Below, piece by piece: positions 7,000-57,791 of a DNA stretch of 64,000 nucleotides. The notes below the pieces were generated by a model that ran no database searches, was not told where the DNA came from, and saw only the letters and a program-made list of their open reading frames with translations. Position 1 is the stretch's first letter; each line of letters begins with the position of its first letter. Position numbers and translations under genes: made by a program. The stretch is from positions 186,112 through 250,111 of IMG/VR virus record IMGVR_UViG_3300037086_000360. The stretch is one strand, 5' to 3'.

Positions 7000-7006
7000 T
7001 TTTCTT

Positions 7007-7082: not shown

Positions 7083-7105
7083 TTATTTTGCATATGTCTT
7101 TATAT

Positions 7106-7177
7106 CTCTTCGTAGCTCAACGGTAGAGCAAGAATCCCTAAAATTCTAGGTCGCGGGCTCGACACCCGCCGGAGAGG
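7106..7177 (+). tRNA. tRNA with CTA anticodon (amber suppressor-like), atypical C33 and T loop
   Basis: CTCTTCG/CGGAGAG acceptor, G73; AGAAT-CCCTAAA-ATTCT places CTA at 7138-7140; T loop CTCGACA. Confidence 0.72.
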
Positions 7178-7181
7178 CCTT

Positions 7182-7255
7182 GGTCCTGTAGCTCAGATGG
7201 TCAGAGCAACGGATTCTAACCCCGTCGGTCGAGGGTTCGAGCCCCTCCAGGATCT
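7182..7255 (+). tRNA. tRNA with CTA anticodon (amber suppressor-like)
   Basis: GGTCCTG/CAGGATC acceptor; ACGGA-TTCTAAC-CCCGT places CTA at 7216-7218 (A31.C39 mismatch); canonical T loop. Confidence 0.72.
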
Positions 7256-13738: not shown

Positions 13739-14836
13739 ATGGATGAATCTGACAAACAAGACCAGGAGTTCCCTCCAGGTACAGTGCCATCGGACCAGTG
13801 GAATGACTGGCGATGGCAAATGCGGAATCGAGTTAAAAACATTGAAGACATTAAGACATTGGGATTATGGAAAGATGACACATTGCCTAATCCAAAGCGT
13901 CTTCCCTTCACGGTAACCCCTTATTATTTGAAAGTCGCTCTCAATTCGAAAGCTCTTCAAAAAACTTTCGTGCCGAACATGAGTGAAAACATTGTGACAT
14001 CTGACTGTACGGATGATCCTCTTGCAGAAGAACATGACTCTCCTGTCAAATGCATCGTACATCGATATCCAGACAGAGTTCTGTTCCTTGCAACAGATCT
14101 TTGTGCTACTTATTGTCGCTATTGTACAAGAAGCCGAGTGATAGAGCAAAATGGATTTACTAAGTCTGAGTGGGAAAAGGGATTCGAATACATCAGAGAA
14201 CACGAAGAAGTTCGAGACGTTCTTATCTCTGGTGGAGACCCTCTCACATATGACGATGATAATCTTGAGTATTTGATTTCAAGCATTAGAGCAATTTCTC
14301 ATGTCGAAATCATAAGAATTGGTACCAAAGTTCCAGTCGTTCTTCCCCAAAGAATAACCCCAGAACTGGTGGCAATGCTTAAGAAGTATCATCCGTTATT
14401 CATGAGCATTCATTTCACCCATCCCGACGAACTCACAGAGGAATGTAAGACTGCATGCTTAATGCTTGCTGATGCAGGAATCCCTCTCGGAAGTCAAACA
14501 GTTTTGTTGAATGATGTGAATGATAATCTCTATATTCTGAAAGCTCTGTTCCAGGGTCTGTTAAAGATTAGAGTTCGCCCCTATTATCTCTATCAGTGTG
14601 ATGTTGTTCAAGGAGCTGCCCATTTTAGAACTCCTTTGGACGTGGGCATCAGGATGATTGAGGGATTAAGAGGATGGACTTCTGGATATGCTGTTCCACA
14701 ATTTGTAATTGACTTACCGAATGGTGGTGGAAAAACACCGGTCATTCCAAATTATGTGGTTGGAACTGAAGGAAAGAACATTGTCTTCAGAAATTATGAG
14801 GGCCAATCCTATCTCTTTCCCGATATAGCATCATGA
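13739..14836 (+). CDS. kamA: KamA-family radical SAM enzyme (lysine 2,3-aminomutase-like)
   Basis: WNDWRWQ, HRYPDR, CATYCRYC (CxxxCxxC), SGGDPL and the PLP-lysine motif GGGKTP. Confidence 0.93.
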   Translation: MDESDKQDQEFPPGTVPSDQWNDWRWQMRNRVKNIEDIKTLGLWKDDTLPNPKRLPFTVTPYYLKVALNSKALQKTFVPNMSENIVTSDCTDDPLAEEHDSPVKCIVHRYPDRVLFLATDLCATYCRYCTRSRVIEQNGFTKSEWEKGFEYIREHEEVRDVLISGGDPLTYDDDNLEYLISSIRAISHVEIIRIGTKVPVVLPQRITPELVAMLKKYHPLFMSIHFTHPDELTEECKTACLMLADAGIPLGSQTVLLNDVNDNLYILKALFQGLLKIRVRPYYLYQCDVVQGAAHFRTPLDVGIRMIEGLRGWTSGYAVPQFVIDLPNGGGKTPVIPNYVVGTEGKNIVFRNYEGQSYLFPDIAS

Positions 14837-15922: not shown

Positions 15923-16009
15923 GGAGTCCGGGCAGGCCGGTAATGCAGCAGATTGCTAATCTGTACAACCCTTCATCGGGTTGACCGAGTTCGATTCTCG
16001 GGGGCTCCG
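15923..16009 (+). tRNA. trnS: tRNA-Ser(GCT)
   Basis: GGAGTCC/GGGCTCC acceptor, GCAGA-TTGCTAA-TCTGT, long variable arm, G73. Confidence 0.9.
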
Positions 16010-16053
16010 CTCAATTGGAAGGATTGTGGAGACCTTCCGGAAAGGATTTTATC

Positions 16054-19013: not shown

Positions 19014-21306
19014 AATCATATTCTTTCTTCTCACAATCTCATCTTTTTCAGCCCAAAGCTCGAATATTGTTCCTCTTGATTTTACTATTAATGAACAATC
19101 TCAAAAAACAATCAACTGCATCATTGTTGATAACCAACTATTGTCTATAGATAGAACAAAGTTGATTGAAGTTGTTCGTCCCATTCTAGATGAATCAACC
19201 TTCTTTAAGCTTCAAAATGAAATAGCAAACAAAGATTTCGTGCCTCCAAAAGATTTAGAGAAATATGGTATTATATCAAAATATGATTCCAATTTGTTGA
19301 AGCTGGAACTAAATATTCCTATTCAAGAACAAAGGGTTCAAGTCCTTAGAATGCCTGGCAGCTCGATTCCAAACTATGTTGCCGCAACTCCAGCAGATTT
19401 CAGTGTCTACCTTAATATGAGAACAACCATGAATCTGCAGACAGCATATGATATCCAAAACTCTATAACCTTGCCCACTCAGCTTATCCTTCAACCTGTG
19501 ATTAACTACAAAGGATGGGTTCTTGATACCAGCGTGACAAGTAGTGTCATTGAGTACCCTAGCATCAGCCTCGATTACGCTAGAGTTGTTCATGATTTTC
19601 CAGACAACTCACAACGACTCACTATTGGTTCCGTCTTTTTCCCAACTACTGCTTTTATGGCACCATTTCCTGCTTATGGAGTTGAGTTCACGCGCAATCC
19701 AATCATGACTCAAGCTCTTCGAAGTCCATATCTCATTCGACAAAGCTTTGAACTTTCTCAGCCATCTGCAGTAAGTATCATACTCAACGATAGAACTCTG
19801 GAGTCCTATCAATTGAATTCAGGCAAATATGTCCTTCCAGATATTCCTTTCATTGGAGGGTTAAATGACTTAGTCATAAATACAAATGGCCAAATAACCC
19901 ATACTGAAGTTTCGTATGATGCGAGACTTCTCGTTGAAAATGACATGTCGTATTCTGTGAACGTAGCAATTCCACAATGGGAGCTACAAGTTCCAATATT
20001 TTCAGGCTATTTCCTGTATGGAATCCTTCCATTTCTAACTGTTGGTGTCAATATGCAGGCAGGACTTGGCCGTCAAATGGAAGGAGTTGAGGCTGTTTAT
20101 TCTACTCCATATGGAAGTGTTCATGGACAGTTTGGATTGAGTGAAAGTCCAATCGATTTTGCGGCAGAAATCGACTATCGACTTGTATTTGCATATGGAA
20201 ATCTCCGTCCTACCGTGACCTTCAGCGCCCAATACACTGGACAAAACTTCTTACTCCCAGGTTTTGATTACAACAGCAACATTTACGCCTGGCTTTTTTC
20301 TGCAAGCTACGGTCAATCTCTTCCATATGGCATTGGGCTTAGCTTGGGGGTTGGATACCAAGTGGGATTGAGTCCAAACCCCGATCAAGCAAGTGCGAAT
20401 ATTACTCTCACAAAACAAATCTTCAAAGATACAAACATAAGTTTGATGTTCACAGTTGCCTACCAAGCAGGCAATCCATTGAAGTTTGAAGGATATTTTG
20501 GTCTAGCTTCTGTTGCACTTGGAGGTAAAGAGACCACCAACTTCAACTCCCAGCTTGATGGGCAATCAGCCTCAGTAAATGCCACCTATCAGCCAAATCA
20601 GAGTCTTCCGATGTTTTCAACTTTCTTGGCAAAGAGTCCAGATTTGAATGGGGCTATTTCGGCGAACTATAATGTGCCATTCACTGAAAGTTCATTGACA
20701 GAATCTTTTTCACCAACAACAAACAGTCTCGTTCTCTCTGCCGGTGTGGCGATTGTAATGGTCGAAGGTCATTTTGGAATCACAAGACCAATCTCAGATA
20801 GTTTTGCTCTCATTATTCCTCAAGACAATATGGCTGGTCAAACTGTCGTTGCAAACAAGCAGGCTGAAACCTATGATGGCATGGCTATGAAAAACTTCAA
20901 CATTGGTCTTTCACAGTTGCCATCCTATACCTTAGATCTAGTGACCCTTAGTTCTCCTACCGCCCCTATAGATACGAACGTGGGAGACAGTATAAGAGTC
21001 ATGAAGCCAACTTACAAGAGTGGAATCGCTCTATTTGTTGGAACAAAGGCAGCAATTTCCATAAAAGGAAAGCTCACATTTAATGGACAGCCTTTCACTT
21101 ATCAATCAGGACAAATCAAAGGAAATACTAGTGTCACCTTTTTCACAGATGAAAATGGAGATTTCGAAGCCTACGGTTTGAGTCCAGGAGATTATCAACT
21201 CACCATCAATGATCTTGAGGGATACAGTCAGAAAATTACAATCCCAATAGCAGCCCCGGCTTCTTATAATATAGGAACGATTGTTGTTCAGGAGAAAAAG
21301 CAATGA
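18982..21306 (+). CDS. Fimbrial usher
   Basis: 774-aa beta-rich protein with usher-like segments (RLTIGS..F, GL.PG.YQL), located between chaperone and adhesin. Confidence 0.85.
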   Translation: MSRLSLIRFVRIIFFLLTISSFSAQSSNIVPLDFTINEQSQKTINCIIVDNQLLSIDRTKLIEVVRPILDESTFFKLQNEIANKDFVPPKDLEKYGIISKYDSNLLKLELNIPIQEQRVQVLRMPGSSIPNYVAATPADFSVYLNMRTTMNLQTAYDIQNSITLPTQLILQPVINYKGWVLDTSVTSSVIEYPSISLDYARVVHDFPDNSQRLTIGSVFFPTTAFMAPFPAYGVEFTRNPIMTQALRSPYLIRQSFELSQPSAVSIILNDRTLESYQLNSGKYVLPDIPFIGGLNDLVINTNGQITHTEVSYDARLLVENDMSYSVNVAIPQWELQVPIFSGYFLYGILPFLTVGVNMQAGLGRQMEGVEAVYSTPYGSVHGQFGLSESPIDFAAEIDYRLVFAYGNLRPTVTFSAQYTGQNFLLPGFDYNSNIYAWLFSASYGQSLPYGIGLSLGVGYQVGLSPNPDQASANITLTKQIFKDTNISLMFTVAYQAGNPLKFEGYFGLASVALGGKETTNFNSQLDGQSASVNATYQPNQSLPMFSTFLAKSPDLNGAISANYNVPFTESSLTESFSPTTNSLVLSAGVAIVMVEGHFGITRPISDSFALIIPQDNMAGQTVVANKQAETYDGMAMKNFNIGLSQLPSYTLDLVTLSSPTAPIDTNVGDSIRVMKPTYKSGIALFVGTKAAISIKGKLTFNGQPFTYQSGQIKGNTSVTFFTDENGDFEAYGLSPGDYQLTINDLEGYSQKITIPIAAPASYNIGTIVVQEKKQ

Positions 21307-22214
21307 AATCACGAATCATTTTAATCTTGTTGATGTTTATGTCTCTTTCAATTGGAGCCCAGACATTAACTTTTTCAGTTCCTCCAGGAAATCCTACTGG
21401 AACCTATTCTCCTGATACTGGTGTTACTATAGTTAGCACAATGACTATTCGGCATACTGGAGCCGCTTGTAGCTATTTTATCACTTTTGCTTCTGGATCA
21501 TCTGGAACCTTCACATCAAGAACAGCAAAAAGTGGTGCCAACATTCTCAACTATCAAATCTATGACAACATAACCAATAAAAATGTTCTCGAGGATTTGA
21601 CAGCGAGTCCAACATCTGCAAATGTGTTGAGTGGTTCTTTCGCAGCAGGAACTGCGACTCAGGTCCAAACATTCACAAGCTATGTTGCAACAACACAACT
21701 TCCTCCGGTTGGAACCTACACAGATGCTATAAGAATGGACATTTATATTGGAACAATAGCCGCTCACGGGGCATCTGTCAGAAATCGTACCTTCACAGAA
21801 ACCATGACTGTTCCAACTCTTCTCGACATATGCCTCGTTCCAACCGGTTCGTCCTTCAATGTTGCAAGCACTTCTACCACTTTCAACTTTGGAACTCTTT
21901 CAACTGGACAAAATCTTGGTGATGATTTCATGGTGAGATCTAATGGATTAAACACAGTGAAGGTCACTTCTACAAATGGACAAGTGTTAAAGAATGCTAT
22001 TAGTGGAGATATTAGTTCAGTTCCATATATCTTTGCTGTTAATGCTGTTGCATACACACTACCAGCCGCCACTGCTGTAACCATCATAGCGAGTCAACCA
22101 GCAACTGTAGCGACTGGAAAGCGATACCCAATTCTAGTAACCATAGGCACCATAGGGTGGGTCAGTGCGGCCACATATACAGACACGATCACTTTTACCG
22201 CAACTGCAAACTAG
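21303..22214 (+). CDS. Two-domain tip pilin/adhesin (CsuE-like)
   Basis: Signal peptide; LNYQIYD, PVGTYTDAI and ATYTDTITF spore-coat-U-like motifs in two domains. Confidence 0.8.
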   Translation: MKSRIILILLMFMSLSIGAQTLTFSVPPGNPTGTYSPDTGVTIVSTMTIRHTGAACSYFITFASGSSGTFTSRTAKSGANILNYQIYDNITNKNVLEDLTASPTSANVLSGSFAAGTATQVQTFTSYVATTQLPPVGTYTDAIRMDIYIGTIAAHGASVRNRTFTETMTVPTLLDICLVPTGSSFNVASTSTTFNFGTLSTGQNLGDDFMVRSNGLNTVKVTSTNGQVLKNAISGDISSVPYIFAVNAVAYTLPAATAVTIIASQPATVATGKRYPILVTIGTIGWVSAATYTDTITFTATAN

Positions 22215-23693: not shown

Positions 23694-23968
23694 GGGGCCG
23701 TAAAGGTTTCGACTGAACAGTGTTGGGCTTAGCCGAAGTTTTTCTACAAAATAGACGCGAATAACTTCGCTCTCGCGGCATAGCCGCTCACCTAACGGCA
23801 TTTAGTTTTTTGCTTCTAGCTGTTGGGTAACAAAAAGCAAAGAACGGGTTCATTCAATGAAACTCCCGTAAAAAAGCGAATTGTGGTATTTAGAATCCAC
23901 CACTCTACGGTTCTACGGCAGGCGAAGGTCCTTTGTTCAGGACGGGATTTCGATTATCCCCGGCTCCA
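23694..23968 (+). ncRNA. ssrA: tmRNA, 275 nt, tag (A)ANNFALAA*
   Basis: GGGGCCG...TTCGAC 5' end; GGGAT-TTCGATT-ATCCC-CGGCTCC-A 3' end with G3.U70; AAAATAGAC upstream of GCG AAT AAC TTC GCT CTC GCG GCA TAG (23757-23783). Confidence 0.92.
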
Positions 23969-23977
23969 TTTCCAGAC

Positions 23978-33776: not shown

Positions 33777-34883
33777 ATGCCGATTACGATCAAGGAACTA
33801 AAAGTCAATCTCAAGCTCGTCCTCAAAAAGGGAACGAAACAGCCTATCACCCCATATATTTGGGGAAAGCCGGGTATCGGAAAGTCGCAAGCTGTCAAGC
33901 AGATCGCCGATGAAATGGGAATTGGTTTCATCGACCTTCGTCTTTCACAGCTTGAATCTTCGGACCTTCGTGGTATCCCTGTTCCTGATATGGTGGCGGG
34001 TATCGCTCGTTGGCTTCCGCCCGAATTCATCCCCTTTCAGGGTGTAAAGGTTTACCAAAATACTTCCGGCATTCTCCTTCTCGACGAATTGAACCGTGCA
34101 AGAACCGACGTTCTTCAGGCCGCCTTCCAGCTTGTTCTCGACCGCCAGGTCGGTATGCACAAGCTCATGGATTCCTGGTACATCGTTGCCGCCGGCAACC
34201 TCGGTATGGAAGACAAGACTGACGTCAATGAGTTCGACTCTGCCCTCAAGAACAGGTTCATCCACTTCACAGTGGATGTCAATCTCGACACTTGGGTGAC
34301 ATGGGCCCAGAAGGCGAATGTTCATCCTGATGTCATCAACTATCTCCAGGGAAAGCCCAATCACCTTTTCTACACGGTGAAGGAAGATGACAATGTGTTC
34401 GTCACTCCTCGTTCTTGGGAAAAGTTTTCCGACATTCTCAAGCAGAATCCGGATGTCGATCCCAAGGAAATCACCCAGGCCATCGGTTCCGCAATCATCA
34501 ATGGTTGTGCCGGCCACTTCATCAAGTACCTCGAGTCCAAGGAGATCATCTCTCCGAAAGACATCATCGACAAATATGACGAGGTGAAAAACAAGATCAA
34601 AGCACTTCAGCGTGATCAGGTTTACCAGCTCAACACCGAGTTGGCTTCCTACATCGTGAAGAGTTTGAATAAGGACGCCAACAAACCTCGCAGGACCAAG
34701 GCCCTCGAGTCCGTCCATCAGTACTGTCATGATCACCTGGAGAAGGACATCTACATCGCGTTCCTCCAGTCTCTCACCAAGTCGTGCAATGGAGCTTCTC
34801 CGGTGAATGACTTCATGGACCTCTACCTGAAGAAATACATCGAGGATTCCAAACTGGTCATCAGCATCCTCAAGAAGAACTAA
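33777..34883 (+). CDS. MoxR-like AAA+ ATPase (system 2)
   Basis: WGKPGIGKS, IDLRLSQ, LLLDELNR, IVAAGN, ALKNRF, TPRSW. Confidence 0.93.
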   Translation: MPITIKELKVNLKLVLKKGTKQPITPYIWGKPGIGKSQAVKQIADEMGIGFIDLRLSQLESSDLRGIPVPDMVAGIARWLPPEFIPFQGVKVYQNTSGILLLDELNRARTDVLQAAFQLVLDRQVGMHKLMDSWYIVAAGNLGMEDKTDVNEFDSALKNRFIHFTVDVNLDTWVTWAQKANVHPDVINYLQGKPNHLFYTVKEDDNVFVTPRSWEKFSDILKQNPDVDPKEITQAIGSAIINGCAGHFIKYLESKEIISPKDIIDKYDEVKNKIKALQRDQVYQLNTELASYIVKSLNKDANKPRRTKALESVHQYCHDHLEKDIYIAFLQSLTKSCNGASPVNDFMDLYLKKYIEDSKLVISILKKN

Positions 34884-35331: not shown

Positions 35332-37143
35332 ATGGCAGTCACCAAAGAACAAATCAAAGAAAACGCCAAGAAGATGATTTCAGTCATCGACAAGCTGACT
35401 AAGGTCAAGAGGGTCCGTCTCCCGGCTCGCGTTGAAGCAGTGTCGGTGAAGTGGGTTCGTGATGCTCCTTTCTTCTCGGAGTTCTTGATGAGGTTCAACT
35501 ACTTTGAGACTGAAGCAATTCCTACAATGGGAGTTAATTGCGTCAAGGGACGTATCAACCTCTATATCAACACTACGTTTATGAATGGTGGTGGTGAGTT
35601 CTACAAGTTTGACAAAGAAGGCAAACCCATTCTCAAGATGAAGGGTGGAAAACCACTTCTTGACGATCAGGGAAATGTCATCTACGAGATGGAGCCTTGG
35701 AAGGGTCTCAATGATGACCAGCTTGAGGCAGTTCTTCTTCACGAAATCATGCATCTCATTCGTTGTCACCATGAGAGGACGCTTGAAGACCCTTATGTTT
35801 TCAACGTCGCTGGGGACATGCTTATCAATGACGATTTGAAAACAATGCAGATCGGAAATCGTAAACCAACACTTCCTGACGGCGCCGTCTATCTCGACAT
35901 GGCAAAGAAGGAAGGGTATAAGGATGAGCCCATCACTGAAAAGGTGTATGTGTGGCTCATTGATCAGCGTCAGAAATACATGAATGCAATGCAGGACCTG
36001 ATGAAACAGCAGGGAAAGCAGAGCGGCCAAAAACAGCAGTGTTCTCATTGTGGTGGTTCAGGAAAAGTTGATCAGGAATGCTCTGAGTGCGGTGGAAAGG
36101 GAACTACGAAGCCGAAGTGCCCAACCTGTGGTGGAACTGGCCAGAAGCAACAAAACCAGGGAAATCAGAAGCAGGATGGAAAGGGAAAGGGCAAAGATCA
36201 GAAAGATAAGGGCGACGGAAACCAACAGGGAGAAGGCCAAGGTCAGGGTGATCAGAAACAGGATCAGCAGGGTAGTGGTCAGGGACAGGGAGATCAGGAA
36301 GGTGATGGACAGGGAAGCTCTTGCCCCGACTGCCATGGAACTGGAAAAGACCAGAGCGGACAGGAAGTTCCTTGTCCAAGCTGCGGTGGAGGCGGTCACG
36401 AAGAAGGAAAATGCCCTCACTGTGGCGGAAGCGGCAATCAACGCGGTTCCGACTTGTTTGATGCAATGTACGGTTCCAAGATCGATGACCACTCTTCAAT
36501 GGAACAGAATGATGAACTGACTGAGGCAACTATTAGGGAAATCATCGAAACTGGAAAGATCCGCGGATGGGGCAACATTAGCGGAGAAGCGGTCGAGAAA
36601 CTCGAAGAACTGACAAAACCATCCAAGATCTCTTGGAAGCAGATTCTCCGAAGGTATCTCACTGCGGCCATCCATGACGTTGGAAACATCTACGAAAACT
36701 CTTGGTCCAAGAGAAACAGAAGGCAGCTTCCACTTCCTGGAATCAAGAAGCTCAACAACCGTGTCATCATCGGAATTGATACGTCTGGATCCATTGGTAA
36801 GAAGGAATTTCAGATGTTCTTCACCGAAGTCGAGAGGATTGTCAAAGACACGTCCAACATCATTCTTCTCCAGTGGGATACGGAAATCAAAGATGTGAAA
36901 CTTGGCTACAAGAAGGGCGACTGGAAGAAAATCGCAATCAAGGGCAGAGGAGGCACGGACGTCCAGAAGACTTTCGACTGGATGGTCGAAGAGAAATACA
37001 CCACGTATCCACTCATCATGTTTACGGACGGTTATTTTGACCACAACTTCGACACTCGTGCTGTCAAGGTCGTATGGTGTGTCACCCAGAGCGAGAATAA
37101 GATCCCCGGGGGAGACAATATCTACATCGACATAGATGAATAG
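35332..37143 (+). CDS. DUF2201 metallopeptidase-vWA protein with inserted CxxCxGxG zinc-finger repeats (system 2)
   Basis: LLHEIMH, NVAGDMLIN, six CxxCxGxG repeats, IDTSGS, GRGGT, MFTDG. Confidence 0.9.
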   Translation: MAVTKEQIKENAKKMISVIDKLTKVKRVRLPARVEAVSVKWVRDAPFFSEFLMRFNYFETEAIPTMGVNCVKGRINLYINTTFMNGGGEFYKFDKEGKPILKMKGGKPLLDDQGNVIYEMEPWKGLNDDQLEAVLLHEIMHLIRCHHERTLEDPYVFNVAGDMLINDDLKTMQIGNRKPTLPDGAVYLDMAKKEGYKDEPITEKVYVWLIDQRQKYMNAMQDLMKQQGKQSGQKQQCSHCGGSGKVDQECSECGGKGTTKPKCPTCGGTGQKQQNQGNQKQDGKGKGKDQKDKGDGNQQGEGQGQGDQKQDQQGSGQGQGDQEGDGQGSSCPDCHGTGKDQSGQEVPCPSCGGGGHEEGKCPHCGGSGNQRGSDLFDAMYGSKIDDHSSMEQNDELTEATIREIIETGKIRGWGNISGEAVEKLEELTKPSKISWKQILRRYLTAAIHDVGNIYENSWSKRNRRQLPLPGIKKLNNRVIIGIDTSGSIGKKEFQMFFTEVERIVKDTSNIILLQWDTEIKDVKLGYKKGDWKKIAIKGRGGTDVQKTFDWMVEEKYTTYPLIMFTDGYFDHNFDTRAVKVVWCVTQSENKIPGGDNIYIDIDE

Positions 37144-49491: not shown

Positions 49492-50172
49492 ATGAATAGG
49501 TACTCAGCCTCCAAAATAAAAACGTTTGAGACATGTAGACTGCAATTCAAACTACACTATATTGAAAACATCGAAGTAGAAAAACCAGTCTCACCAGACA
49601 CAGAATTTGGTTCTCTCATCCACAAAGCAGCAGAGATTTATAATGGATCCAATCTCACTGAAGTGGTAAAGCTTACAAGAGATTACCATCTCAATGAAGC
49701 ATACAAGAGAGAAATAGCCCACACATTAAGAAATCTTTTTGTGTTCAGTCAGAAATACAAACACGTCGATGAAAAAAGAGAGCTTGAAATTGAATGGAAA
49801 ACGGATGACATTTGGTTATATGGCTTTGCCGACAAGTTGATCGATAATAACCAACTCATTTGCATTGACTACAAAACAGCAAAATACGCCGACACTTCAA
49901 GATTCATGTTCCAAATGAGACTCTATAATCTCATCCTCTCTCACGTCTATCAAAAAGATCCCGACAAAATCAGATTTGTTGTCTATTTTCCAAGAATAGA
50001 TACTGAAGAGAAGATTCTTTTTTCAAAGAAGGAAATCATTCTCTTTGAGAGTGACATAAGGAAAAAGATCACTACAATAGAATCTAACACCGATTGGAAC
50101 CCAGCTCCTGGATACCATTGTAGATGGTGTCAATACTGTAAAGGCACCAATTGTGATGTTGGAAAGTGTTAG
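49492..50172 (+). CDS. PD-(D/E)XK nuclease (RecB/Cas4-like)
   Basis: SASKIKTFETC...GFADKL...IDYKT...QMRLY...CRWCQYC...C. Confidence 0.88.
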   Translation: MNRYSASKIKTFETCRLQFKLHYIENIEVEKPVSPDTEFGSLIHKAAEIYNGSNLTEVVKLTRDYHLNEAYKREIAHTLRNLFVFSQKYKHVDEKRELEIEWKTDDIWLYGFADKLIDNNQLICIDYKTAKYADTSRFMFQMRLYNLILSHVYQKDPDKIRFVVYFPRIDTEEKILFSKKEIILFESDIRKKITTIESNTDWNPAPGYHCRWCQYCKGTNCDVGKC

Positions 50173-50865: not shown

Positions 50866-51614
50866 AATTTGTCAAAGCTTCAGACCAGCCTCTCCACGAA
50901 CACTTGCCTCCAAAGCTGCTGAAGCAAATGAATGGTAGCATTAATAGTCTTATGGACATAAAGCTTTATCCAAATGTGGCTATATATCTCATGAAGCCTG
51001 GAACCAAGGGCTATTTCAAATATATTGCAACTTTAGCAAACAATGGAATTGAGGCCGCTAGCTGGTCAATTAGGGTGTTTTTTACAAACAATTGTTGGAC
51101 TTTGCAGGTAGCCCCACATCCAGAGATAGATCCTCATCAAATAACAATTAACCTTTATGAAATTTTAGAAAATGTTAAAGATGATACTGTAAAAACTTAT
51201 GGTAATTTACATTTTGCCTCAATGACAACCACCACCAAATCAAAAATTGAAACAGTTGTTAATCTCTTCGTTGAAAAATTAGCGACTTGTAAAATACCTG
51301 GAGTTGAGTCCCAGCCAATCGATAAAAAATACTCAATGTCTTTTAGTAACTCTAAGTATCGAATACACTATAACCCTGTTGTTGTCAACCCTTTCAATGA
51401 AAAAAATGTAGCTAAATATAATGCTATACTAAGGGCATTAAAAAATAAGGCTCTTGATGAAAACGAATTGAAGTTTATCAATCGAATTTCAAAGAAGTTG
51501 GAGAGTGGAAAACCGCTCATAAAAAAAGAGCATAGATTATTTAATGAGATGAGTCAAGATCATCTCTCCCAAAATGAGAAGATAAAGATCGCATTAGCTT
51601 TTTTAACGGAGTAG
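50862..51614 (+). CDS. Hypothetical protein
   Basis: 250-aa coupled ORF. Confidence 0.6.
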   Translation: MKFVKASDQPLHEHLPPKLLKQMNGSINSLMDIKLYPNVAIYLMKPGTKGYFKYIATLANNGIEAASWSIRVFFTNNCWTLQVAPHPEIDPHQITINLYEILENVKDDTVKTYGNLHFASMTTTTKSKIETVVNLFVEKLATCKIPGVESQPIDKKYSMSFSNSKYRIHYNPVVVNPFNEKNVAKYNAILRALKNKALDENELKFINRISKKLESGKPLIKKEHRLFNEMSQDHLSQNEKIKIALAFLTE

Positions 51615-51624
51615 AAGATACCCT

Positions 51625-52386
51625 ATGAAAGGGATTTATAAAATAACGAATCTGATCAACGGCAAGGTCTATATTGGTAAAAGTGAAGTATCAATAGAAG
51701 ATAGATGGAAATATGCCGGAACTACTAACGAACATTTTGCCAACGCTATAAAGAAATATGGGATCAATAATTTCAAGTTCGAAGTTCTGATTGAAACTGA
51801 TCAACACCTGAATGAATTAGAGACACAATATATTCTAGAATACAAGTCGAATGATCAGCATTTTGGTTACAATAAGACTCTTGGCGGTGACGGCTGTCTA
51901 GCAACTGAAGAAACTAAGAAGAAAATGAGTGAGAATTGGACACCGAGAGAGCCTTGGAACAAAGGAAAGAAGACAAAGCCCCATTCTTCTGAAACAAAGC
52001 TAAGAATGAGTGCGTCTCACAAGGGAAAGACCACTGGCCCACATTCAGAAGAGAGAAAACGAAAGAATAGTGAATCACATATAGGCATATTTCCATCAGT
52101 AGAGACCCGTGCTAAGCAAAGTGCTTCTATGAGGGGTAAAAATACTGGTCCTAAGTCACTGGAGCATAGAAAAAGGCTTAGTGAGTCACACAAAGGTATT
52201 CCGACTTGGAATAAGGGCTTAAAAGCCTCTGAAGAGTTGAGAAAAACACTTAGTGAGGCCCACATGGGAATAAAAAATGACTACGAAGAGAGAATCTGTC
52301 CCTATTGTGGTAAAAAAGGTAAGGGTGGGGTGATGGTGAGATGGCATTTTGATAATTGCAAGTTGAAGGGAGCCGTGAGTGACTAA
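51625..52386 (+). mobile_element. GIY-YIG homing endonuclease with NUMOD3-like repeats
   Basis: GIYKITNLINGKVYIGKS, GYN.T.GG, repeated HSEE.K.K.S.(S/A)H.G. Confidence 0.9.
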
Positions 52387-53311
52387 TCTAATCATCGACA
52401 GCAATAATGTTTCCAGCATTTCCTATTTCAAAGCCAAGAGTATGGCCCATATGCGTGGAAATCTGACTGAGGATGAGGCCGGAAGACAGCGATTGTCCAA
52501 TTTTTCAACCTATCTCTATTTTCAAATGATTCATAGTTATATTAGCCAATTCAATCCTTCCAAAATGTACGTGGTGTGGGACGGCCCCTCTGGCAGCACA
52601 TGGAGGAAGGCGGCTTACCCAGATTACAAGGCAGGAAGGGATCATTCTGGTGACAATTTCTACAGACAATTCCAGGGCTCATGTGAGCAAGAAAGGTTGA
52701 TTTTATCAGCATATCCCATTTATCAGCTTCAAGTCGACGAGGCAGAAGCTGATGATTTGATATACTCGGTGTGTAAAATCTTATCCGCGGATGCTAAAAA
52801 TGATCAAATTGTGGTATCTGGGGATGGAGACATGCTTCAGCTTCCTCAGCATTTTTCTAATACCAAGATATGGAATCCCCGCAACAAACAATTCCAGGAC
52901 ACTCCAGCCTATGATGTTATTCTCTATAAGTCGATCACTGGAGACGGTAGCGATAGAATCACCGGCATTCCAGGCTTTGGAGCCAAAAGAGGCTTGAAAC
53001 TAATGGAAGACATGAAGAATGGCTCTGCTAAGGTGACTGATGAACAACTTGCCATTATCGCCAAGTTTAGGAACCTTGTCGATCTCTCTGCCAACCCATT
53101 TGAAGAGAAAAACAGAAACTCCATTATCGAACTGTTGGACAAAACTAAGATAACACTAGATCAAGATAGAATCCAACAGCTTTTCGTGAGGTATGAACTT
53201 AACGGCTTCATGAAGAGGTGGGCGTATATAAGAAAATTGCTCACGCAACTAGAAACGGAGGCAGCAAATGGAGGGGCAACAGAAAGTGAATCTGATCAAT
53301 TTCGGTGCTGA
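52379..53311 (+). CDS. 5'-3' exonuclease / T4 RNase H (FEN family)
   Basis: IIDSNN, VVWDG, WRK..YPDYKAGR, EADDLI, SGDGDMLQL, GDGSD.I.GIPG.G.KR. Confidence 0.93.
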   Translation: MTNLIIDSNNVSSISYFKAKSMAHMRGNLTEDEAGRQRLSNFSTYLYFQMIHSYISQFNPSKMYVVWDGPSGSTWRKAAYPDYKAGRDHSGDNFYRQFQGSCEQERLILSAYPIYQLQVDEAEADDLIYSVCKILSADAKNDQIVVSGDGDMLQLPQHFSNTKIWNPRNKQFQDTPAYDVILYKSITGDGSDRITGIPGFGAKRGLKLMEDMKNGSAKVTDEQLAIIAKFRNLVDLSANPFEEKNRNSIIELLDKTKITLDQDRIQQLFVRYELNGFMKRWAYIRKLLTQLETEAANGGATESESDQFRC

Positions 53312-53708
53312 ATTACACGAAGATGTGATCAAGGAGATAGAAGAGAAGCATAATGTAAAACTTAAGATGGTGTCTATCAAAGCATCTTTGAATCTAAAGA
53401 AGCATAGTACATATATTCAAGCTCACGATATTATTGAAAAAAATAAAAATTATTTTTGTGAAAATGATTTCTCTATCATCAATCTACCAGGACTTCCAAT
53501 CTTTGCGGCGTTCTTAATAACAGAAATCCATGCTCTGACAGGACGCTTTCCAATCATCGTGGAATGTCTAAAAGACTATTCACAAGATGGAATCTTCTCC
53601 CACTATAAATTCAAAAGACTCTATGATCTTGATAGAGAGCGAGTCCAATCACGTGAATATTTCAAGACGAGTTGCAAAGAACCTCGACAAGATTTAGAAG
53701 ATAAATAA
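53268..53708 (+). CDS. Csx15-like protein (stand-alone)
   Basis: LINF..EL, INLPGLPIFAAFLITEIHALTGRFP and Y....LYDL...R..SR match, from recall, the Csx15 pattern LLNFSHPL...VNxP....AAxLLAELHGRxGxFP. Confidence 0.75.
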   Translation: MEGQQKVNLINFGAELHEDVIKEIEEKHNVKLKMVSIKASLNLKKHSTYIQAHDIIEKNKNYFCENDFSIINLPGLPIFAAFLITEIHALTGRFPIIVECLKDYSQDGIFSHYKFKRLYDLDRERVQSREYFKTSCKEPRQDLEDK

Positions 53709-54640
53709 ATGGACGTCTTAGAGTTTTTCGATAAGGTGCGAGCCAATGGCTGGCGCAATAATATAGAAGCCGAAATCTCATACAGCTTTGACAAGCTATT
53801 GGAGAAACTTTCTGCGTCCAAGACCGAAATCGTAGAGAAAACTGCCAAACAGCTCGAAATCTTGGATCAATTCAAGAAAGAAGAGAAAGAAGAAATGACT
53901 TATTCTATCTTCGAGAAATGGATTGAGAGATTTATACGCAACACGATCATTGAAAGATTCGACAATAAGGAAAACGAAGAGTGAAAACGTTCAACGATTT
54001 TTCAAAAAAACTTGAAGAGACATCTGGTAGAGCTAAGGCTGCTTATGATAGAACTCATTGGAATATGGCGATTGGAGTAGTGACTCAGGTTGTTTTTGAC
54101 GACAAGGATGACGAAGCTATTGAAAAAGTCGCCCAAGAATCTGGATACGATCCAACTATCACAAAACTCGCTAAAGAAGTTTATAAAGAACTTAAGAACG
54201 ATCTCAAAAATATGAGAAAGTAAATGTTTTATTACATGACTCTCTATGACTATACAAAACCCAAACCATATCATCAACCAAAATTTGGAAAGAAAGAGGG
54301 GATAATTTGGATTGGTAAAAATCCAAACGAAGGATATAGGCCTGCTGGCCACGATGCTTTAAGTGAAGAACAGATGATTAAATCATATTTCAAATATATC
54401 TCACAAGGATATGTCTTTGAAATCAGAAAATAGGGGGAATACAAAAATGTGGAAAAAAGTATTAGGATGGATCTTGGCAGTTGTTCTTGGGCCACTACAC
54501 ATCGGTCTTTCATTTATCAGCAAGGCGGCTCAGAAGCTTTGGGGAGAATTGCTCCCTGAAATTCATGATGTTGAAGCTGCAATCAAGAAGTTTTTCAACC
54601 TTCCATAAGGAATAGGGCCCTTGAGGGCCCTTTTAACTAT

Positions 54641-55439
54641 AATGAACTTCACAGATTACATCGCCAAAACAGTCATTCAAAAACAAATCATCAAAAACAA
54701 CCCTCAAGATTTAAAGCCTATGATACCGGTCATGCAAAAGACTCGATCATATAAAGAAGTTGAAACTGTAAAACCAAAACAAAAGCTTAATCTTACTCTC
54801 ATGAGACATCGATTCGGAGAAGAAAAGGGCGAATGGAAGATGAAGTGGTACGTCCAATGGCCGTTCTTCACTCCTATAGATAAGTCGCTTTCTGCTGAAC
54901 AAGTTAAGGCTTTTGCTGAGGACTATCTTCATACGAGCAGCGAAAGAGGAGACGATAAATATATCCAAGTCGAATCTGCCGACAAAAACTATGTAATTTA
55001 TAAGTGGGACGTTGAAAGGTGGCTCAGTGATAACTTCAGATCTGTCGTTGTCAAATACCATCCACCGACCACTCTAGCCTACAAATTTAAAATCTCGGTC
55101 CCACTCTTCATTTTCAGTCATGCCTCTCCTTCCGATCTCTCTAGGTTTATCGGTGATAGATTCTCGAAATGGTTAGGCTCTCACAAATCAAAATTTGAAA
55201 CTAAATGGTTCGCTTTTCTCAAGAAAGTAACTCCTGATCTGTTTGACTGGACAACAGATTTCCAAATGGGTGAAATCAGAGCCTCCCTCAAATACTCCAT
55301 TATTCTTACCTCTCTCGCAGCCTACATGTTGTTCTTCCACAAGAAGAGTTTTGCTCCAAAGGAATTCAGCGGACTCAAAAAACAACTTACCAAACTCAGT
55401 TCCGTTGATGATTTGGAGAAAAATCTGAAAAATCTCTAA
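54641..55439 (+). CDS. Hypothetical protein
   Basis: Long ORF downstream of a GGGCCC hairpin. Confidence 0.6.
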
Positions 55440-55496
55440 CAACACAATCCAATCGAGTCTGAAAGATAAACTAAACATAAGGAAAGGGGGTGAGTT

Positions 55497-56012
55497 ATAC
55501 CACTGACGATCTACAAAGACAGTCGTTTTGTATACGCTAAGACATTCCATCCGAATGTCAAAAGGGACCGTCATAGGAAAGCACAAGAACTGAAGAGAAA
55601 GCAGTTACTTTATACTGAGAATTGGGATGAGATTCGACATAAAGTCTATGAGCGCGACGGCCATCGTTGTGTGATTTGTGGGAAGAGGGGCAAGCTACAT
55701 GCGCATCATATCGTTCCAGTCAAGTTGAGTCATGATAATAGCATGACCAACCTTGTGACCTTGTGCAATAAACACCACCTGAAATTGGAAAAGATTGGCT
55801 TTGCCATACTAGAAAGAGGCGGAGGAAGAACAGATGTAAGAAGGACAGAGCTTCAAATAATTATGGAAGCGAGAAAAGAACGCTTTCAAAAGCTGATCGA
55901 GAATCGTGATAAAATAGAGTCAAAGGAGAAAATACTTGAGCGACCAGTTGCAAATGAAAGCGATGCTTCAGATCATAAAGACGCTGAAGGAAATGTCGCA
56001 GAAAATGGATAA
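55497..56012 (+). CDS. HNH endonuclease with a probable non-ATG start
   Basis: W..IR..V.ERDGHRCVICG...HAHHIVP...NLVTLCNKHH; the frame is open back to 55494 with no ATG. Confidence 0.8.
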   Translation: MPLTIYKDSRFVYAKTFHPNVKRDRHRKAQELKRKQLLYTENWDEIRHKVYERDGHRCVICGKRGKLHAHHIVPVKLSHDNSMTNLVTLCNKHHLKLEKIGFAILERGGGRTDVRRTELQIIMEARKERFQKLIENRDKIESKEKILERPVANESDASDHKDAEGNVAENG

Positions 56013-56084
56013 CATTGCGGAGGTCATGGATACTTTGCTTGATATTGAAGTCAAGAAGGTCGAGGCCGAAAAAAGAGGATTCTA

Positions 56085-57791
56085 ATGAAAATAGAAAAAC
56101 TTGTAAGCCATCTCGCTGAGAAAGAAGCGCTCGAACTCAAAAACATCGTCGATGACATTAGAGACGAAAAAACTCTTTTGAAGGTTGTGGCCGACGTTGC
56201 AAAAATTTACGATGATTGCTGCATGGCCAAAAATCGCAATTTGATAGAGTCGACGTGCGTGCATAATAGAGCTCGAAAGTATTTGGATGGGAATAAGGAG
56301 GACTAAATGAATACTGAAGAAAATAGAGAGCTAAAAAATTTGGATGAGTATTTGAATGAACTCGAATACGTCGATTTTCAGGGAGATCCAGATCCAGCTA
56401 AACAAATGAAGGCTCAACTAATCAAGAATATTGGTCTCGAGGGACTCACGGTGAAGGAACTACCAGATGAACAGTATCAATTGACCTGGAAAGGAAAAAC
56501 AGAAACCTACGATTTCGAAAATCTTTTGAAAAAATTGATTGAGCTTGCTAAAACCACTACTGCCGCTGAGCGCAAGGCACAAGCCCAGCCAACACCTCCG
56601 TCTCCAGCACCGGCTCCAGTAAAGGCGAACGTACCGGCTCAAGTTCAGGTATAAGAAATGGAACTAGATAATTTGATCGAGAAGATAAAGGAACAACCCT
56701 TTATCACCTACAAAAAAATTGTTGGTGAGATCAAGGACGAAGCAACTCTCAAAAAGATTATCACAGATCTTTCTAAAATCTATGACGATTGTTGCATGGC
56801 TGTTGCTTTGAGGCCAGTGAATCCTGATTGCATTCACATCAAAGCTCGCAAAGCTCTTGCTGAAGAGGAGGGCAAATAAGATGGAATTAGATAGATTTTC
56901 CACTCATCTTGAAAAGATGGATGAGTTCATAGATCCAATGGTTGCCGGAGAACTTATAGGTACAGCCATAAGTCTACCTCTCTGTGCTTTGCTTGGTTTT
57001 GTTCTTGGGGCATATGGCCGCGCAAATCTATTAAAAAAAGATGATGTGACGGCTACAGCATATCTCAAAGATGCTATCAAGACATTTTTTCAAAAGGGAG
57101 ATCTCAGAAAACACATGAAGAATGTAGATAAAGAGACTCTTACACAGATGACTAAAAAGCATAGGAAACTTGCTGACAGTATGCGAACATATATTAAGAA
57201 GCCTAACGATTATGATCTGTACGAAATGGCTGGATATCTCCAGCGCATGAGCAAAGAAGATCGAGAAGAAGCGATGAATATGATTAAAGGAAAAAGCTAA
57301 TGAACCTTAGTTTGGATCAAATAGTAAATGGTGCTATTGATAAAAAGGCACTAGAAAGACAGAGAAAGATTATCGCTCGACACGATTACACCAACCCAAA
57401 GAAAGTTGTTGAACCTATCAACTCCAACATTTCAGAGGAATTGGTTGGTGCCCCAGTGGGATTGCCCATTGCAGCACTAATCGATTATGTAAATAAGTGG
57501 GTTAGTGAATCAGCACTTCGAAAGAAGGATGATGTGACTACTATGGCCTATCTCAAAGAACGAATTCAAACATTCTTTGAAGAGGAGACATTGAAGAAGT
57601 ATATTAAGGAGCTTGATAAGGTTGCTATTATGAGAATAGCTGAGAAACATCAGAAACTTGGATCATCTATAAAATCGTATATTAAGGAACAAAACGAGGA
57701 CGCTCTGGAAGGAATGGTGAAATACTTTTTAAAAATGACTAAAGAAGAGCGTCGAGAAACTATGAAACTGATTAGAGGAGAAAGTAAATGA
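56085..57791 (+). other. Two paralog pairs (56085/56658 and 56857/57300) plus 56307
   Basis: KIYDDCCM...C.H..ARK shared by the first pair; KKDDVT..AYLK..I.TFF shared by the second. Confidence 0.7.

What the first reader, a model, noticed from the sequence alone, without database searches (positions are those of the whole stretch)
53268..53708. Stand-alone Csx15-like gene: candidate anti-type III CRISPR protein
Seen: full-length match by eye to the Csx15 pattern; no cas genes or array in the window; coupled to the RNase H/FEN gene. Known: Csx15 accompanies type III CRISPR loci and has been proposed to bind or degrade cyclic oligoadenylate, and viral ring nucleases such as AcrIII-1 defeat type III immunity. 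Inference: a host signal-clearing protein repurposed as an anti-CRISPR.
Basis: partly seen in the sequence, partly recalled or inferred. Interest (0 to 1): 0.8.

Follow-up and report, generated by a model that had tools for sequence, protein, structure and literature searches.

The report
Huge-phage Csx15-like protein without catalytic residues
A giant peat-soil phage carries a strongly conserved stand-alone copy of Csx15, a small bacterial CRISPR-associated protein that binds or destroys cyclic alarm nucleotides, but it lacks the residues needed for cutting, so it most likely soaks up the host's alarm signal; this is untested.

Summary
ORF 53268-53708 (+, 146 aa) matches NCBIfam CAS_Csx15 over its full length (36.3 bits, cutoff 35). 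Of 42 family members, 41 hit that model and nothing else. A family profile finds the CliCsx15 and PfCsx15 crystal-structure sequences and the CbCash Csx15 domain. The window is the last 64 kb of a 250 kb IMG/VR phage contig from peat. It has no CRISPR array and no Cas10, Csm/Cmr, CARF-effector or CD-NTase gene.

The gene belongs to a family of more than 100 variants, found only on phage contigs of 82-499 kb. It sits at a fixed position there and is the most conserved gene locally.

In all 103 close homologues the catalytic head histidine is Ala/Ser/Thr/Val. The catalytic third arginine is Tyr/Phe in 101 of them and never Arg. The residues needed for cA4 binding and oligomerisation (H88, Y113, R125, R129) are kept.

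I therefore favour a non-canonical, probably sequestering, anti-cyclic-oligonucleotide protein rather than a repurposed ring nuclease. Viral Csx15 was proposed as "AcrIII-3" in an October 2026 preprint, which called it rare. Nothing here has been tested biochemically, and 186 kb of the contig were not seen.

The parts
53268..53708 (+). Csx15-like gene (146 aa): stand-alone Rossmannoid domain of the CARF/SAVED superfamily
   Evidence: NCBIfam CAS_Csx15 36.3 bits against cutoff 35, full length. PADLOC Csx15 6e-7. 41 of 42 family members hit the model. PDB Csx15 chains 9teu/9tet hit by the family profile. AF2 model pLDDT 89.5, pTM 0.80, with five strands and flanking helices.
53257..53261 (+). 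GGAGG Shine-Dalgarno, 6 nt before the ATG, inside the 3' end of the FEN gene
   Evidence: Read directly from the sequence.
53298..53318 (+). Head loop after strand 1 (residues 11-17, NFGAELH). It occupies the place of the canonical NF(S)GH motif, but the catalytic His position is Ala14.
   Evidence: HMM and hhalign alignments. Among 103 homologues position 14 is A70/S17/T12/V4. His occurs at position 15 in 2 sequences and at position 17 in 28.
53385..53429 (+). Family-specific invariant block SLNLKKxSTYIQxHD (residues 40-54) in the strand 2 to helix 2 loop, with a one-residue insertion (S47). It aligns with the CbCash segment that holds R204, a cA4 contact.
   Evidence: S40, S47 and Q51 are invariant, K45 and D54 are in 102 of 103, and H53 is in 94 of 103. 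Alignment to 9ylu. R204 contact taken from PMC13462974.
53529..53531 (+). H88, equivalent to CliCsx15 H90 and PfCsx15 H82 (needed for cA4-induced oligomerisation)
   Evidence: Alignments. Present in 96 of 103. Mutant data.
53595..53666 (+). Beta hairpin and C-terminal helix carrying F110 (= CbCash F275), Y113 (= Cli Y113), K116, R117, R123, R125 (= Ha R118), R129 (= Ha R122), F132 (in place of catalytic Ha R125) and K133
   Evidence: Position 132 is Y80/F21/H1/N1 and never Arg. R125 and R129 are invariant.
52379..53311 (+). 5'-3' exonuclease/flap endonuclease gene overlapping the Csx15-like gene by 44 nt. A neighbour in the window, L004, L013 and L007, but not in L001/L011, L012, L017 or L018.
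   Evidence: Pfam 5_3_exonuc_N 1.8e-22. PHROG exonuclease 2.7e-30. tblastn synteny.
53709..53984 (+). 91-aa helical protein whose ATG follows the Csx15-like stop codon directly. Conserved downstream partner (24-34% identity), function unknown.
   Evidence: No family hit.
54621..55439 (+). 272-aa protein of unknown function, conserved downstream of the Csx15-like gene even in the 40%-identity relative L007
   Evidence: tblastn. No Pfam or Atlas lead.
49492..50172 (+). PD-(D/E)XK (Cas4-like) nuclease that opens the conserved block. It is the only 'cas-like' hit in the window and is a common phage recombination nuclease.
   Evidence: Pfam PDDEXK_1 3.6e-23. The PADLOC Cas4 hits are attributed to this ORF by inference, because its homologues carry a weak Cas_Cas4 Pfam hit.

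Best explanation
This is a phage-encoded, stand-alone member of the Csx15 family (CARF/SAVED-superfamily Rossmannoid domain). It is a core gene of a clade of huge phages (contigs of 82-499 kb; this one is from peat).

Proposed mechanism, inferred by homology: dimers stack head-to-tail and sandwich a host cyclic oligonucleotide second messenger. The most likely ligand is cA4 from type III CRISPR-Cas, and possibly cA3 or CBASS trinucleotides. The ligand would sit between the basic C-terminal helix and central His of one dimer and the loop face of the next. That would withhold the signal from cOA-activated effectors.

The canonical catalytic head His and third Arg are replaced throughout the family, while the binding and oligomerisation residues are invariant. 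Removal of the signal is therefore more likely by sequestration (a filament-forming sponge, as shown for PfCsx15) than by canonical ring-nuclease chemistry.

Shown here: homology, viral context, conservation, the residue pattern and the local absence of cas genes. Inferred: ligand binding, stacking, sequestration and an anti-defence role.
For: Homology: hhalign 99.8%, E 2.8e-28 to His-bearing Csx15-type proteins; the nearest named Atlas cluster is 'putative CRISPR-associated protein Csx15', score 0.91.

Fold: the AF2 model has pLDDT 89.5, five strands and flanking helices. The top Foldseek PDB hits are cOA sensors (TIR-SAVED with cA3, Cad1 CARF, Crn1, Cap4, Cap5, Cam1), although they are weak.

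Phage context: PHROG hits to head maturation protease, RuvC-like resolvase and thymidylate kinase. The source is a 250 kb IMG/VR contig.

No cas genes in the window or within 10 kb of the gene in a dozen relatives.

Conservation: it is the most conserved gene locally, at 76/70/67/55/40% identity against 20-61% for its neighbours. That is expected for a protein constrained by an invariant small ligand.

Residues: H88, Y113, F110, R125 and R129 are kept, and both faces are invariant. His14 and Arg132 are lost. Published mutants fit this pattern. HaCsx15 H8A and CliCsx15 H13A lose cleavage but still oligomerise on cA4. PfCsx15 acts as a sponge. The CbCash Csx15 domain lacks the head His yet binds cA4.

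Expression: RNA-library contigs from two peat metatranscriptomes lie within the ORF at 100% identity.
Against: There is no biochemical test.

Chi et al. argue that sponging is a poor strategy against type III systems, because these make large amounts of cOA.

PfCsx15 H11A lost cA4 binding, so loss of the head His could also mean loss of binding.

Anti-defence genes are usually accessory and variable, whereas this one is core and syntenic inside a replication/recombination module.

The Foldseek matches are weak (best E 3e-3, TM about 0.4), and the solved Csx15 structures were not in the fold library.

The host is unknown, so it is not known whether it has type III CRISPR or CBASS.

186 kb of the source contig were not examined.

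The RNA evidence is sparse, and DNA carry-over in those libraries cannot be excluded.
Confidence: 0.45

Rival explanations
1. It is a genuine viral ring nuclease (the 'AcrIII-3' idea). It degrades cA4 or other cOAs, but with a rebuilt active site that uses family-specific invariant residues (S40, K45, S47, H53, D54, K133) in place of the canonical head His and third Arg.
For: The family-specific polar block at residues 40-54, with its one-residue insertion, is invariant in 103 sequences and lies on the ligand face. K133 follows the lost Arg position on the same helix. Degradation is the better strategy against abundant type III signals. Klimavicius et al. propose viral Csx15 as ring nucleases.
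Against: Both residues shown to be catalytic (Ha H8, R125) are absent in all members. No alternative active-site geometry could be checked, because the tools give no model coordinates or multimer prediction. Some natural Csx15 proteins are already non-enzymatic.
Confidence: 0.2
2. It has a function unrelated to defence. It could be a nucleotide- or nucleic-acid-binding accessory protein of the phage replication/recombination module, derived from the Csx15/CARF fold but no longer concerned with cyclic oligoadenylates.
For: It is a core, syntenic gene within the block of PD-(D/E)XK nuclease, two unknown genes, FEN in some relatives, and the Csx15-like gene. It is the most conserved gene there. 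The link to FEN persists down to the 40%-identity relative L007, which also carries gp32 and SLT. The catalytic residues are lost.
Against: FEN is not a constant neighbour. The residues that remain invariant are exactly those that bind cA4 phosphates and bases in solved Csx15 and Cash structures. No DNA-binding or enzymatic motif was found.
Confidence: 0.2
3. It is an in-trans regulator (a damper) of a cyclic-oligonucleotide signalling system encoded by the huge phage itself, for example a phage-borne type III CRISPR-Cas or CBASS locus outside the window. That would be the role Csx15 plays in bacteria.
For: From general knowledge of huge-phage genomics, not tested here, huge phages are known to carry CRISPR-Cas systems. 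CsCsx15 works in trans from a distant locus. Only 64 kb of a contig of at least 250 kb were visible.
Against: No cas or CD-NTase gene lies in the 64 kb window or within 10 kb of the gene in a dozen relatives. The gene is present in every IMG/VR member of the clade that was retrieved. From general knowledge, phage-borne CRISPR systems are sporadic.
Confidence: 0.1

Closest known systems
Csx15 (NCBIfam NF040560): CRISPR-associated cA4-binding ring nuclease or sponge, e.g. CliCsx15 (PDB 9teu), PfCsx15 (9tet), HaCsx15 and CsCsx15
   Same: Same size and single-domain architecture. Full-length match to the profile. Predicted five-stranded Rossmannoid fold. Conserved NF motif, Q51, LPG loop, central His, aromatic stacking residue, and two of the three C-terminal arginines.
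   Different: The head Ser/His motif is absent (Ala14). The third, catalytic Arg is replaced by Tyr/Phe followed by Lys. There is an extra invariant block at residues 40-54 with a one-residue insertion. The gene is encoded by a phage and is never next to cas genes. Sequence identity to the solved proteins is low (profile E about 1e-6).
vCsx15 / proposed AcrIII-3 (Klimavicius et al., bioRxiv 10.64898/2026.10.26.761840)
   Same: Virus-encoded stand-alone Csx15 homologue, hypothesised to counter cOA signalling, metagenomic and untested.
   Different: That paper reports one NCBI viral protein plus 'over 20' metagenomic sequences, calls them rare and places them mostly in prophage regions. Here the family has more than 100 variants at 90% clustering, is a core gene of lytic-looking huge phages, and lacks the catalytic residues. 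Whether any of their sequences belong to this clade could not be checked, because their Figure S8 is not held.
PfCsx15 (non-enzymatic Csx15 'sponge') and the Csx15 sensor domain of CbCash (PDB 9ylu)
   Same: These are Csx15 domains that bind cA4 and form filaments without cleaving it. CbCash also lacks the head His (NFLQPL). Its cA4-stacking F275 aligns with the invariant F110 here.
   Different: PfCsx15 still has the head Ser/His and all three Arg residues and is bacterial. CbCash is fused to a Schlafen nuclease and is a defence effector, not a counter-defence protein.
AcrIII-1 (DUF1874) and AcrIII-2 (viral SAVED): viral ring nucleases
   Same: Viral proteins that neutralise type III CRISPR by removing cA4. 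AcrIII-2 and Csx15 both sandwich cA4 between stacked units. Strong conservation is expected because the target is a small molecule.
   Different: AcrIII-1 has a different fold. AcrIII-2 is a two-lobed SAVED domain with an intact His/Arg active site. There is no sequence match to either.
Phage cyclic-nucleotide sponges Acb2, Tad1, Tad2 and Acb4
   Same: The proposed mode of action is the same: stoichiometric sequestration of immune second messengers.
   Different: The folds are unrelated, and there are no Pfam or PHROG hits. None of them is known as an anti-type III protein with a Csx15 fold.

Membership tests
Csx15 (NF040560, CARF/SAVED superfamily) | Full-length match to the curated family model at or above its cutoff | tested here: met
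   36.3 bits against cutoff 35, profile positions 2-123 of 125. 41 of 42 relatives hit only this model, best E 1.6e-25. hhalign 99.8% to His-bearing homologues. The single-protein score is marginal.
Csx15 (NF040560, CARF/SAVED superfamily) | Rossmannoid fold: central five-stranded sheet flanked by helices, with a beta hairpin and a C-terminal helix | tested here: met
   The AF2 model (pLDDT 89.5) has strands at 5-11, 30-36, 69-72, 96-103 and 112-120 and helices at 18-28, 48-64, 77-91 and 121-135. Foldseek is enriched for CARF/SAVED sensors but weak. No direct superposition on 9teu or 9tet was possible.
Csx15 (NF040560, CARF/SAVED superfamily) | Head-loop Ser/His (Pf S9/H11, Cli H13, Ha H8), required for ring-nuclease activity | tested here: not met
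   The motif is NF-G-A-E. Position 14 is A/S/T/V in 103 of 103, and no His is conserved anywhere in the loop.
Csx15 (NF040560, CARF/SAVED superfamily) | Central His (Pf H82, Cli H90), needed for cA4-induced oligomerisation | tested here: met
   H88 aligns with it and is present in 96 of 103.
Csx15 (NF040560, CARF/SAVED superfamily) | C-terminal Arg triad R-x3-R-x2-R (Ha R118, R122, R125) | tested here: not met
   R125 and R129 are invariant, giving two of the three. The third, catalytic position is Y/F132 in 101 of 103 and never Arg. K133 follows it.
Csx15 (NF040560, CARF/SAVED superfamily) | Aromatic residue stacking on adenine (Cli Y113, Pf F106; CbCash F275) | tested here: met
   Y113 is Y or F in 101 of 103, and F110 is present in 101 of 103.
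Csx15 (NF040560, CARF/SAVED superfamily) | Genomic association with type III CRISPR-Cas (Cas10 nearby or in the same genome) | tested here: not met
   No Cas10, Csm or Cmr gene and no array in the 64 kb window, nor within 10 kb in relatives. The rest of the genome was not visible. About 25% of bacterial Csx15 genes are also orphans.
Csx15 (NF040560, CARF/SAVED superfamily) | cA4 binding with head-to-tail filament formation | not testable with these tools
   This needs DLS or SEC with cA4, or a multimer-plus-ligand structure prediction.
Viral ring-nuclease anti-CRISPRs (AcrIII-1, AcrIII-2, proposed AcrIII-3) | Encoded by a virus, outside any cas locus | tested here: met
   IMG/VR contig and phage structural and replication genes.
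Viral ring-nuclease anti-CRISPRs (AcrIII-1, AcrIII-2, proposed AcrIII-3) | Intact ring-nuclease active site | tested here: not met
   The Csx15-type catalytic His and Arg are absent. There is no similarity to DUF1874 or to a two-lobed SAVED domain.
Viral ring-nuclease anti-CRISPRs (AcrIII-1, AcrIII-2, proposed AcrIII-3) | Inhibits type III CRISPR immunity in vivo | not testable with these tools
   This needs a plasmid- or phage-challenge assay.
Phage nucleotide sponges (Acb2, Tad1, Tad2, Acb4) | Sequence or fold membership in one of these families | tested here: not met
   No Pfam or PHROG hit at E up to 1. The resemblance would be functional only.

The most novel reading that the evidence does not exclude
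A whole clade of huge phages has fixed, as a core gene, a Csx15-derived protein that has lost the canonical ring-nuclease residues. It would act as a filament-forming sponge, or as a nuclease with a rebuilt active site, for host cyclic oligonucleotides. That would make it the first Csx15-fold counter-defence protein with a demonstrable function. It would also show that huge phages depend on neutralising type III CRISPR or CBASS signalling, contrary to the published view that Csx15 is absent or rare in phages and unsuited to viral use.
Probability: 0.4. Interest if true: 0.7.

Novelty: new variant of a known kind. Interest (0 to 1): 0.55.

Why it matters
Csx15 was characterised only in 2026. 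One group states that it was seen in no phage genome and may be useless as an anti-CRISPR. The other found about 20 viral sequences and calls them rare.

Here a Csx15-like gene is the best-conserved gene of its neighbourhood in a clade of 82-499 kb phages, with more than 100 sequence variants. Further viral lineages, some with the catalytic histidine and some without, appear around it.

If it binds cA4 or related signals, it gives a natural series of catalytic and non-catalytic viral Csx15 proteins for studying sponge versus nuclease strategies against type III CRISPR and CBASS. It also bears on how huge phages cope with RNA-targeting type III immunity, which is known to restrict jumbo phages.

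The claim can be tested directly with assays already published for CliCsx15 and HaCsx15.

Tried and rejected
- A single-sequence phmmer search against PDB found nothing relevant. Only the family profile reached the Csx15 chains.
- Foldseek against PDB did not return any Csx15 structure. That library stops at April 2026, and it gave only weak CARF/SAVED hits. The BFVD hits were small uncharacterised viral proteins.
- DNA and protein searches of GenBank phages found no relative.
- A profile search seeded with His-bearing homologues returned no protein that a source names Csx15. Bona fide CRISPR-linked neighbours could therefore not be put into the tree, which remains unrooted.
- The contexts of P0125 and P0121 were too short to be informative.
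- The neighbour g54621 gave no Pfam or Atlas lead.
- The Atlas lead to the viral SAVED-like family Pam3_gp32 could not be followed in the literature. A review of sponge papers found no Csx15-fold sponge.
- The promoter and terminator scan around the gene showed no enrichment.
- Amber recoding, suggested by the two CTA tRNAs, was rejected for the window: 92% coding density in code 11, and TAG used as a stop.
- Reading the gene as part of a local cas operon was rejected.
- The MAG labels (Gammaproteobacteria, Thermoplasmatales) are mutually inconsistent, so they were not used as host evidence.
Full report

The ORF 53268-53708 on the + strand encodes 146 aa. A GGAGG sequence lies 6 nt before its ATG (53257-53261). 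The ESM Atlas holds the identical protein, so public gene calls use the same start.

NCBIfam's curated equivalog model CAS_Csx15 (NF040560) matches residues 9-130 over profile positions 2-123 of 125. The E-value is 5.4e-9 and the score is 36.3 bits, against a cutoff of 35. PADLOC's Csx15 model gives 6e-7. Pfam has no hit.

The single-protein score is marginal, so I checked the family:
- 41 of 42 relatives hit this model and no other, with a best E-value of 1.6e-25.
- A profile of the family finds the PDB chains 9teu and 9tet (both named Csx15) and 9ylu (CbCash, a Schlafen-Csx15 fusion) at 1e-6 to 8e-6.
- hhalign between the close family and a group of His-bearing homologues gives 99.8% probability and E 2.8e-28.
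- The Atlas's nearest named cluster is 'putative CRISPR-associated protein Csx15' at 0.91.

An AlphaFold2 model is confident (pLDDT 89.5, pTM 0.80). It has five strands with flanking helices, a hairpin and a C-terminal helix, as described for the PfCsx15 crystal structure. Foldseek hits are weak (best E 3e-3) but are dominated by cyclic-oligonucleotide sensors: TIR-SAVED with cA3, Cad1 CARF, Crn1, Cap4, Cap5 and Cam1. The fold library did not return the solved Csx15 entries.

The Csx15 similarity is therefore real.

**2. What is around the gene?**

The window is the last 64 kb of IMG/VR contig UViG_3300037086_000360, which is 250,111 bp long. It is clearly a phage:
- PHROGs find head maturation protease, RuvC-like resolvase, exonuclease, thymidylate kinase and many HNH/homing endonucleases.
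- Pfam finds FtsH, a radical-SAM aminomutase-like protein and AAA ATPases.
- There are tRNAs and a tmRNA.

No CRISPR-like array exists. PADLOC on 38 ORFs from about 160 aa up finds only a Cas4-like PD-(D/E)XK nuclease, PtuB/HNH and homing endonucleases. It finds no Cas10, Csm/Cmr, CARF effector or CD-NTase.

The gene overlaps the 3' end of a 5'-3' exonuclease/FEN gene by 44 nt.

**3. The family and its distribution**

The word-indexed search returned 105 clusters (at 90% identity) of 55-94% identical proteins. All are unannotated, and some lie on contigs of up to 388-499 kb. Exhaustive phmmer over 1.84 billion representatives found only 27 hits at E up to 1e-3.

Gene order is conserved on a 124 kb contig and on contigs of 437-480 kb. 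It runs PD-(D/E)XK nuclease, two unknown genes, FEN in some, the Csx15-like gene, a roughly 90-aa gene, a roughly 260-aa gene, HNH, and then large genes of the presumed structural module.

In IMG/VR, the contigs that carry the downstream gene g58202 are the same ones that carry the Csx15-like gene. The gene therefore behaves as core in this clade. Only two GTDB 'genomes' hold it. Both are MAG contigs with mutually inconsistent labels.

The gene is the most conserved one at every locus. It shows 76, 70, 67, 66-68, 55 and 40% identity, where FEN, the nuclease and the other neighbours show 20-61%. FEN is absent next to it in L001/L011, L012, L017 and L018, so the FEN coupling is local and not a family trait.

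More distant homologues also lie on phage-like contigs:
- 31-40% identity: next to gp32, SLT and FEN, or next to Toprim and PD-(D/E)XK genes.
- Distant, His-bearing homologues: a contig of many small ORFs without family hits; a contig with PolA, RNR, SbcCD, PhoH and Cpn10; and contigs with Peptidase_M23 or Pyr_excise genes.

PADLOC on the large ORFs flanking the gene in six further relatives finds methyltransferases and Toprim/AriA-like ATPases but no cas genes. An ML tree puts the huge-phage family in one supported clade (98/95). That clade sits inside a larger His-less group (99/96), which is separate from the His-bearing group. The tree is unrooted.

The locus recurs in peat metagenomes from 2018 to 2025. 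Read-length contigs from two independent peat metatranscriptomes lie inside the ORF at 100% identity: 53140-53426, 53186-53318 and 53468-53600. None of the three RNA runs covers the 2.1 kb upstream. This suggests expression but does not prove it.

**4. What the residues say**

Two 2026 studies define the Csx15 mechanism. Dimers stack head-to-tail and sandwich cA4.
- The 'tail' supplies an Arg triad and a central His. The 'head' supplies a Ser/His loop.
- HaCsx15 H8A and R125A abolish cleavage but not cA4-induced assembly, whereas R118A abolishes binding.
- CliCsx15 H13A abolishes cleavage with little effect on assembly, whereas H90A abolishes assembly.
- PfCsx15 is essentially a cA4 sponge.
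- The CbCash Csx15 domain is a cA4 sensor that stacks adenines on F241 and F275 and uses R204.

The numbering in the HMM alignments identifies 9teu as CliCsx15 and 9tet as PfCsx15 (my counting). The equivalences below come, and the frequencies from 103 close homologues.

| Reference residue | Role | Residue here | Frequency in family |
|---|---|---|---|
| Cli H90 / Pf H82 | cA4-induced assembly | H88 | 96 of 103 |
| Cli Y113 | stacks on adenine | Y113 | Y or F in 101 |
| CbCash F275 | stacks on adenine | F110 | 101 |
| Ha R118 | cA4 binding | R125 | 103 |
| Ha R122 | phosphate contact | R129 | 103 |
| Head His (Ha H8, Cli H13) | catalysis | A14 | A70/S17/T12/V4, never His |
| Ha R125 | catalysis | F132 | Y80/F21/H1/N1, never Arg; K133 follows in 102 |

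No other His is conserved in the head loop. Position 15 has His in 2 sequences and position 17 in 28.

The family also has its own invariant block, S40-L-N-L-K45-x-S47-T-Y-I-Q51-x-H53-D54, with a one-residue insertion. It lies in the loop that aligns with CbCash R204. Both faces of the domain are therefore under strong constraint, as expected for ligand-mediated stacking, but the published catalytic dyad is gone.

**5. Most likely mechanism**

I think the protein still binds a cyclic oligonucleotide at a head-to-tail dimer interface and removes it from circulation. cA4 is the default ligand, and cA3 or CBASS trinucleotides are possible given the breadth shown for Csx15. Sequestration is more likely than canonical hydrolysis. 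The purpose would be to blunt the host's type III CRISPR or CBASS effectors.

High conservation fits a protein whose target is an invariant small molecule.

Arguments against:
- Sponging is thought to be inefficient against the large cOA output of type III systems.
- PfCsx15 H11A lost binding.
- Core, syntenic genes in replication modules are not typical anti-defence genes.

The rivals are a ring nuclease with a rebuilt active site, a replication-module function unrelated to cOA, and an in-trans regulator of a phage-borne signalling system outside the window.

**6. Comparison with what is known, and novelty**

By homology this is a Csx15-family protein. It fails two defining functional features (head His and third Arg) and the genomic association with type III loci. 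I therefore file it as a divergent viral variant and not as a typical Csx15 ring nuclease.

The idea that viruses use Csx15 as an anti-CRISPR already exists. Klimavicius et al. named a Lokiarchaeota-virus homologue vCsx15/AcrIII-3 and found 'over 20' metagenomic viral sequences. They described these as rare and mostly in prophage regions, and none was tested. Chi et al. state that Csx15 was seen in no phage genome and may lack utility as an anti-CRISPR.

Three things are new here:
- the scale, with more than 100 variants and several viral lineages;
- the status of the gene as the best-conserved core gene of a huge-phage clade;
- the systematic loss of the catalytic residues while the binding residues are retained.

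**7. Verdict**

Homology to Csx15 is about 0.9 certain. An anti-cyclic-oligonucleotide role is roughly 0.6-0.65 certain, taking the best explanation and the nuclease rival together. The sponge reading is favoured over the nuclease reading but is unproven.

Interest is moderate to good. The finding is directly testable with published assays, and it contradicts recent statements about how rare Csx15 is in phages.

Noticed in passing
window 23694-23971 (+): Phage-encoded tmRNA (Rfam RF00023, 60.6 bits; ARAGORN tag peptide ANNFALAA).
   Followed up: partly
window 7006-7256 (+); also 3890-3965 and 15923-16010: tRNA cluster with two CTA-anticodon (amber-suppressor type) tRNAs and one odd tRNA that ARAGORN reads with a 4-nt anticodon, plus tRNA-Asn and tRNA-Ser. 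The window nevertheless reads well in the standard code: 92% coding, and TAG is the stop of 29 of 104 ORFs. Any recoding would have to lie elsewhere in the genome.
   Followed up: partly
window 10762-12594, 13739-14836, 33777-34883, 35332-37143, 21303-22214 (+): Unusual cargo for a phage: a full-length FtsH protease, a radical-SAM lysine-2,3-aminomutase-like protein, a MoxR-like AAA ATPase next to a DUF2201 VWA/metallopeptidase protein, and an SCPU (spore coat protein U) domain protein.
   Followed up: no
window 51625-52386 (+): GIY-YIG-type homing endonuclease gene between g50862 and FEN. It has no counterpart at this position in any relative, so it is probably a recent insertion. It contains three copies of a 32-nt repeat (52057-52271).
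   Followed up: partly
window 51000-56900 (RNA runs X8, X12, X19): RNA-library contigs cover 53140-53600, 53873-54701, 55488-55600 and 56411-56643, but nothing in 51000-53139. This hints at a transcript start inside the 3' end of FEN, just upstream of the Csx15-like gene. No convincing sigma-70-like promoter was found there.
   Followed up: partly
window 51428-53458 (DNA run X2): A low-depth back-joint (53458 to 51428, with 15 extra letters) and loose ends at 53429 and 51446 in an independent peat sample. This may be a rearranged variant or an assembly chimera. Unexplained.
   Followed up: no
L021 10001-10420; L019 4770-5138; L030 757-1137; L009 10001-10378: Canonical-looking Csx15 homologues that keep the head His also sit on phage-like contigs (PolA, RNR and SbcCD on a 93 kb contig; a Pyr_excise neighbour). 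Viral Csx15 genes of the catalytic type seem more common than published.
   Followed up: partly
protein P0115 (283 aa): A homologue with two tandem Csx15-like stretches. It recalls the duplicated-Csx15 cluster that Klimavicius et al. link to the origin of SAVED domains.
   Followed up: no
window 53709-53984 and 54621-55439 (+): Two proteins of unknown function always follow the Csx15-like gene. The 91-aa one starts right at its stop codon, and the 272-aa one is kept even in the 40%-identity relative L007. They may be functional partners.
   Followed up: partly
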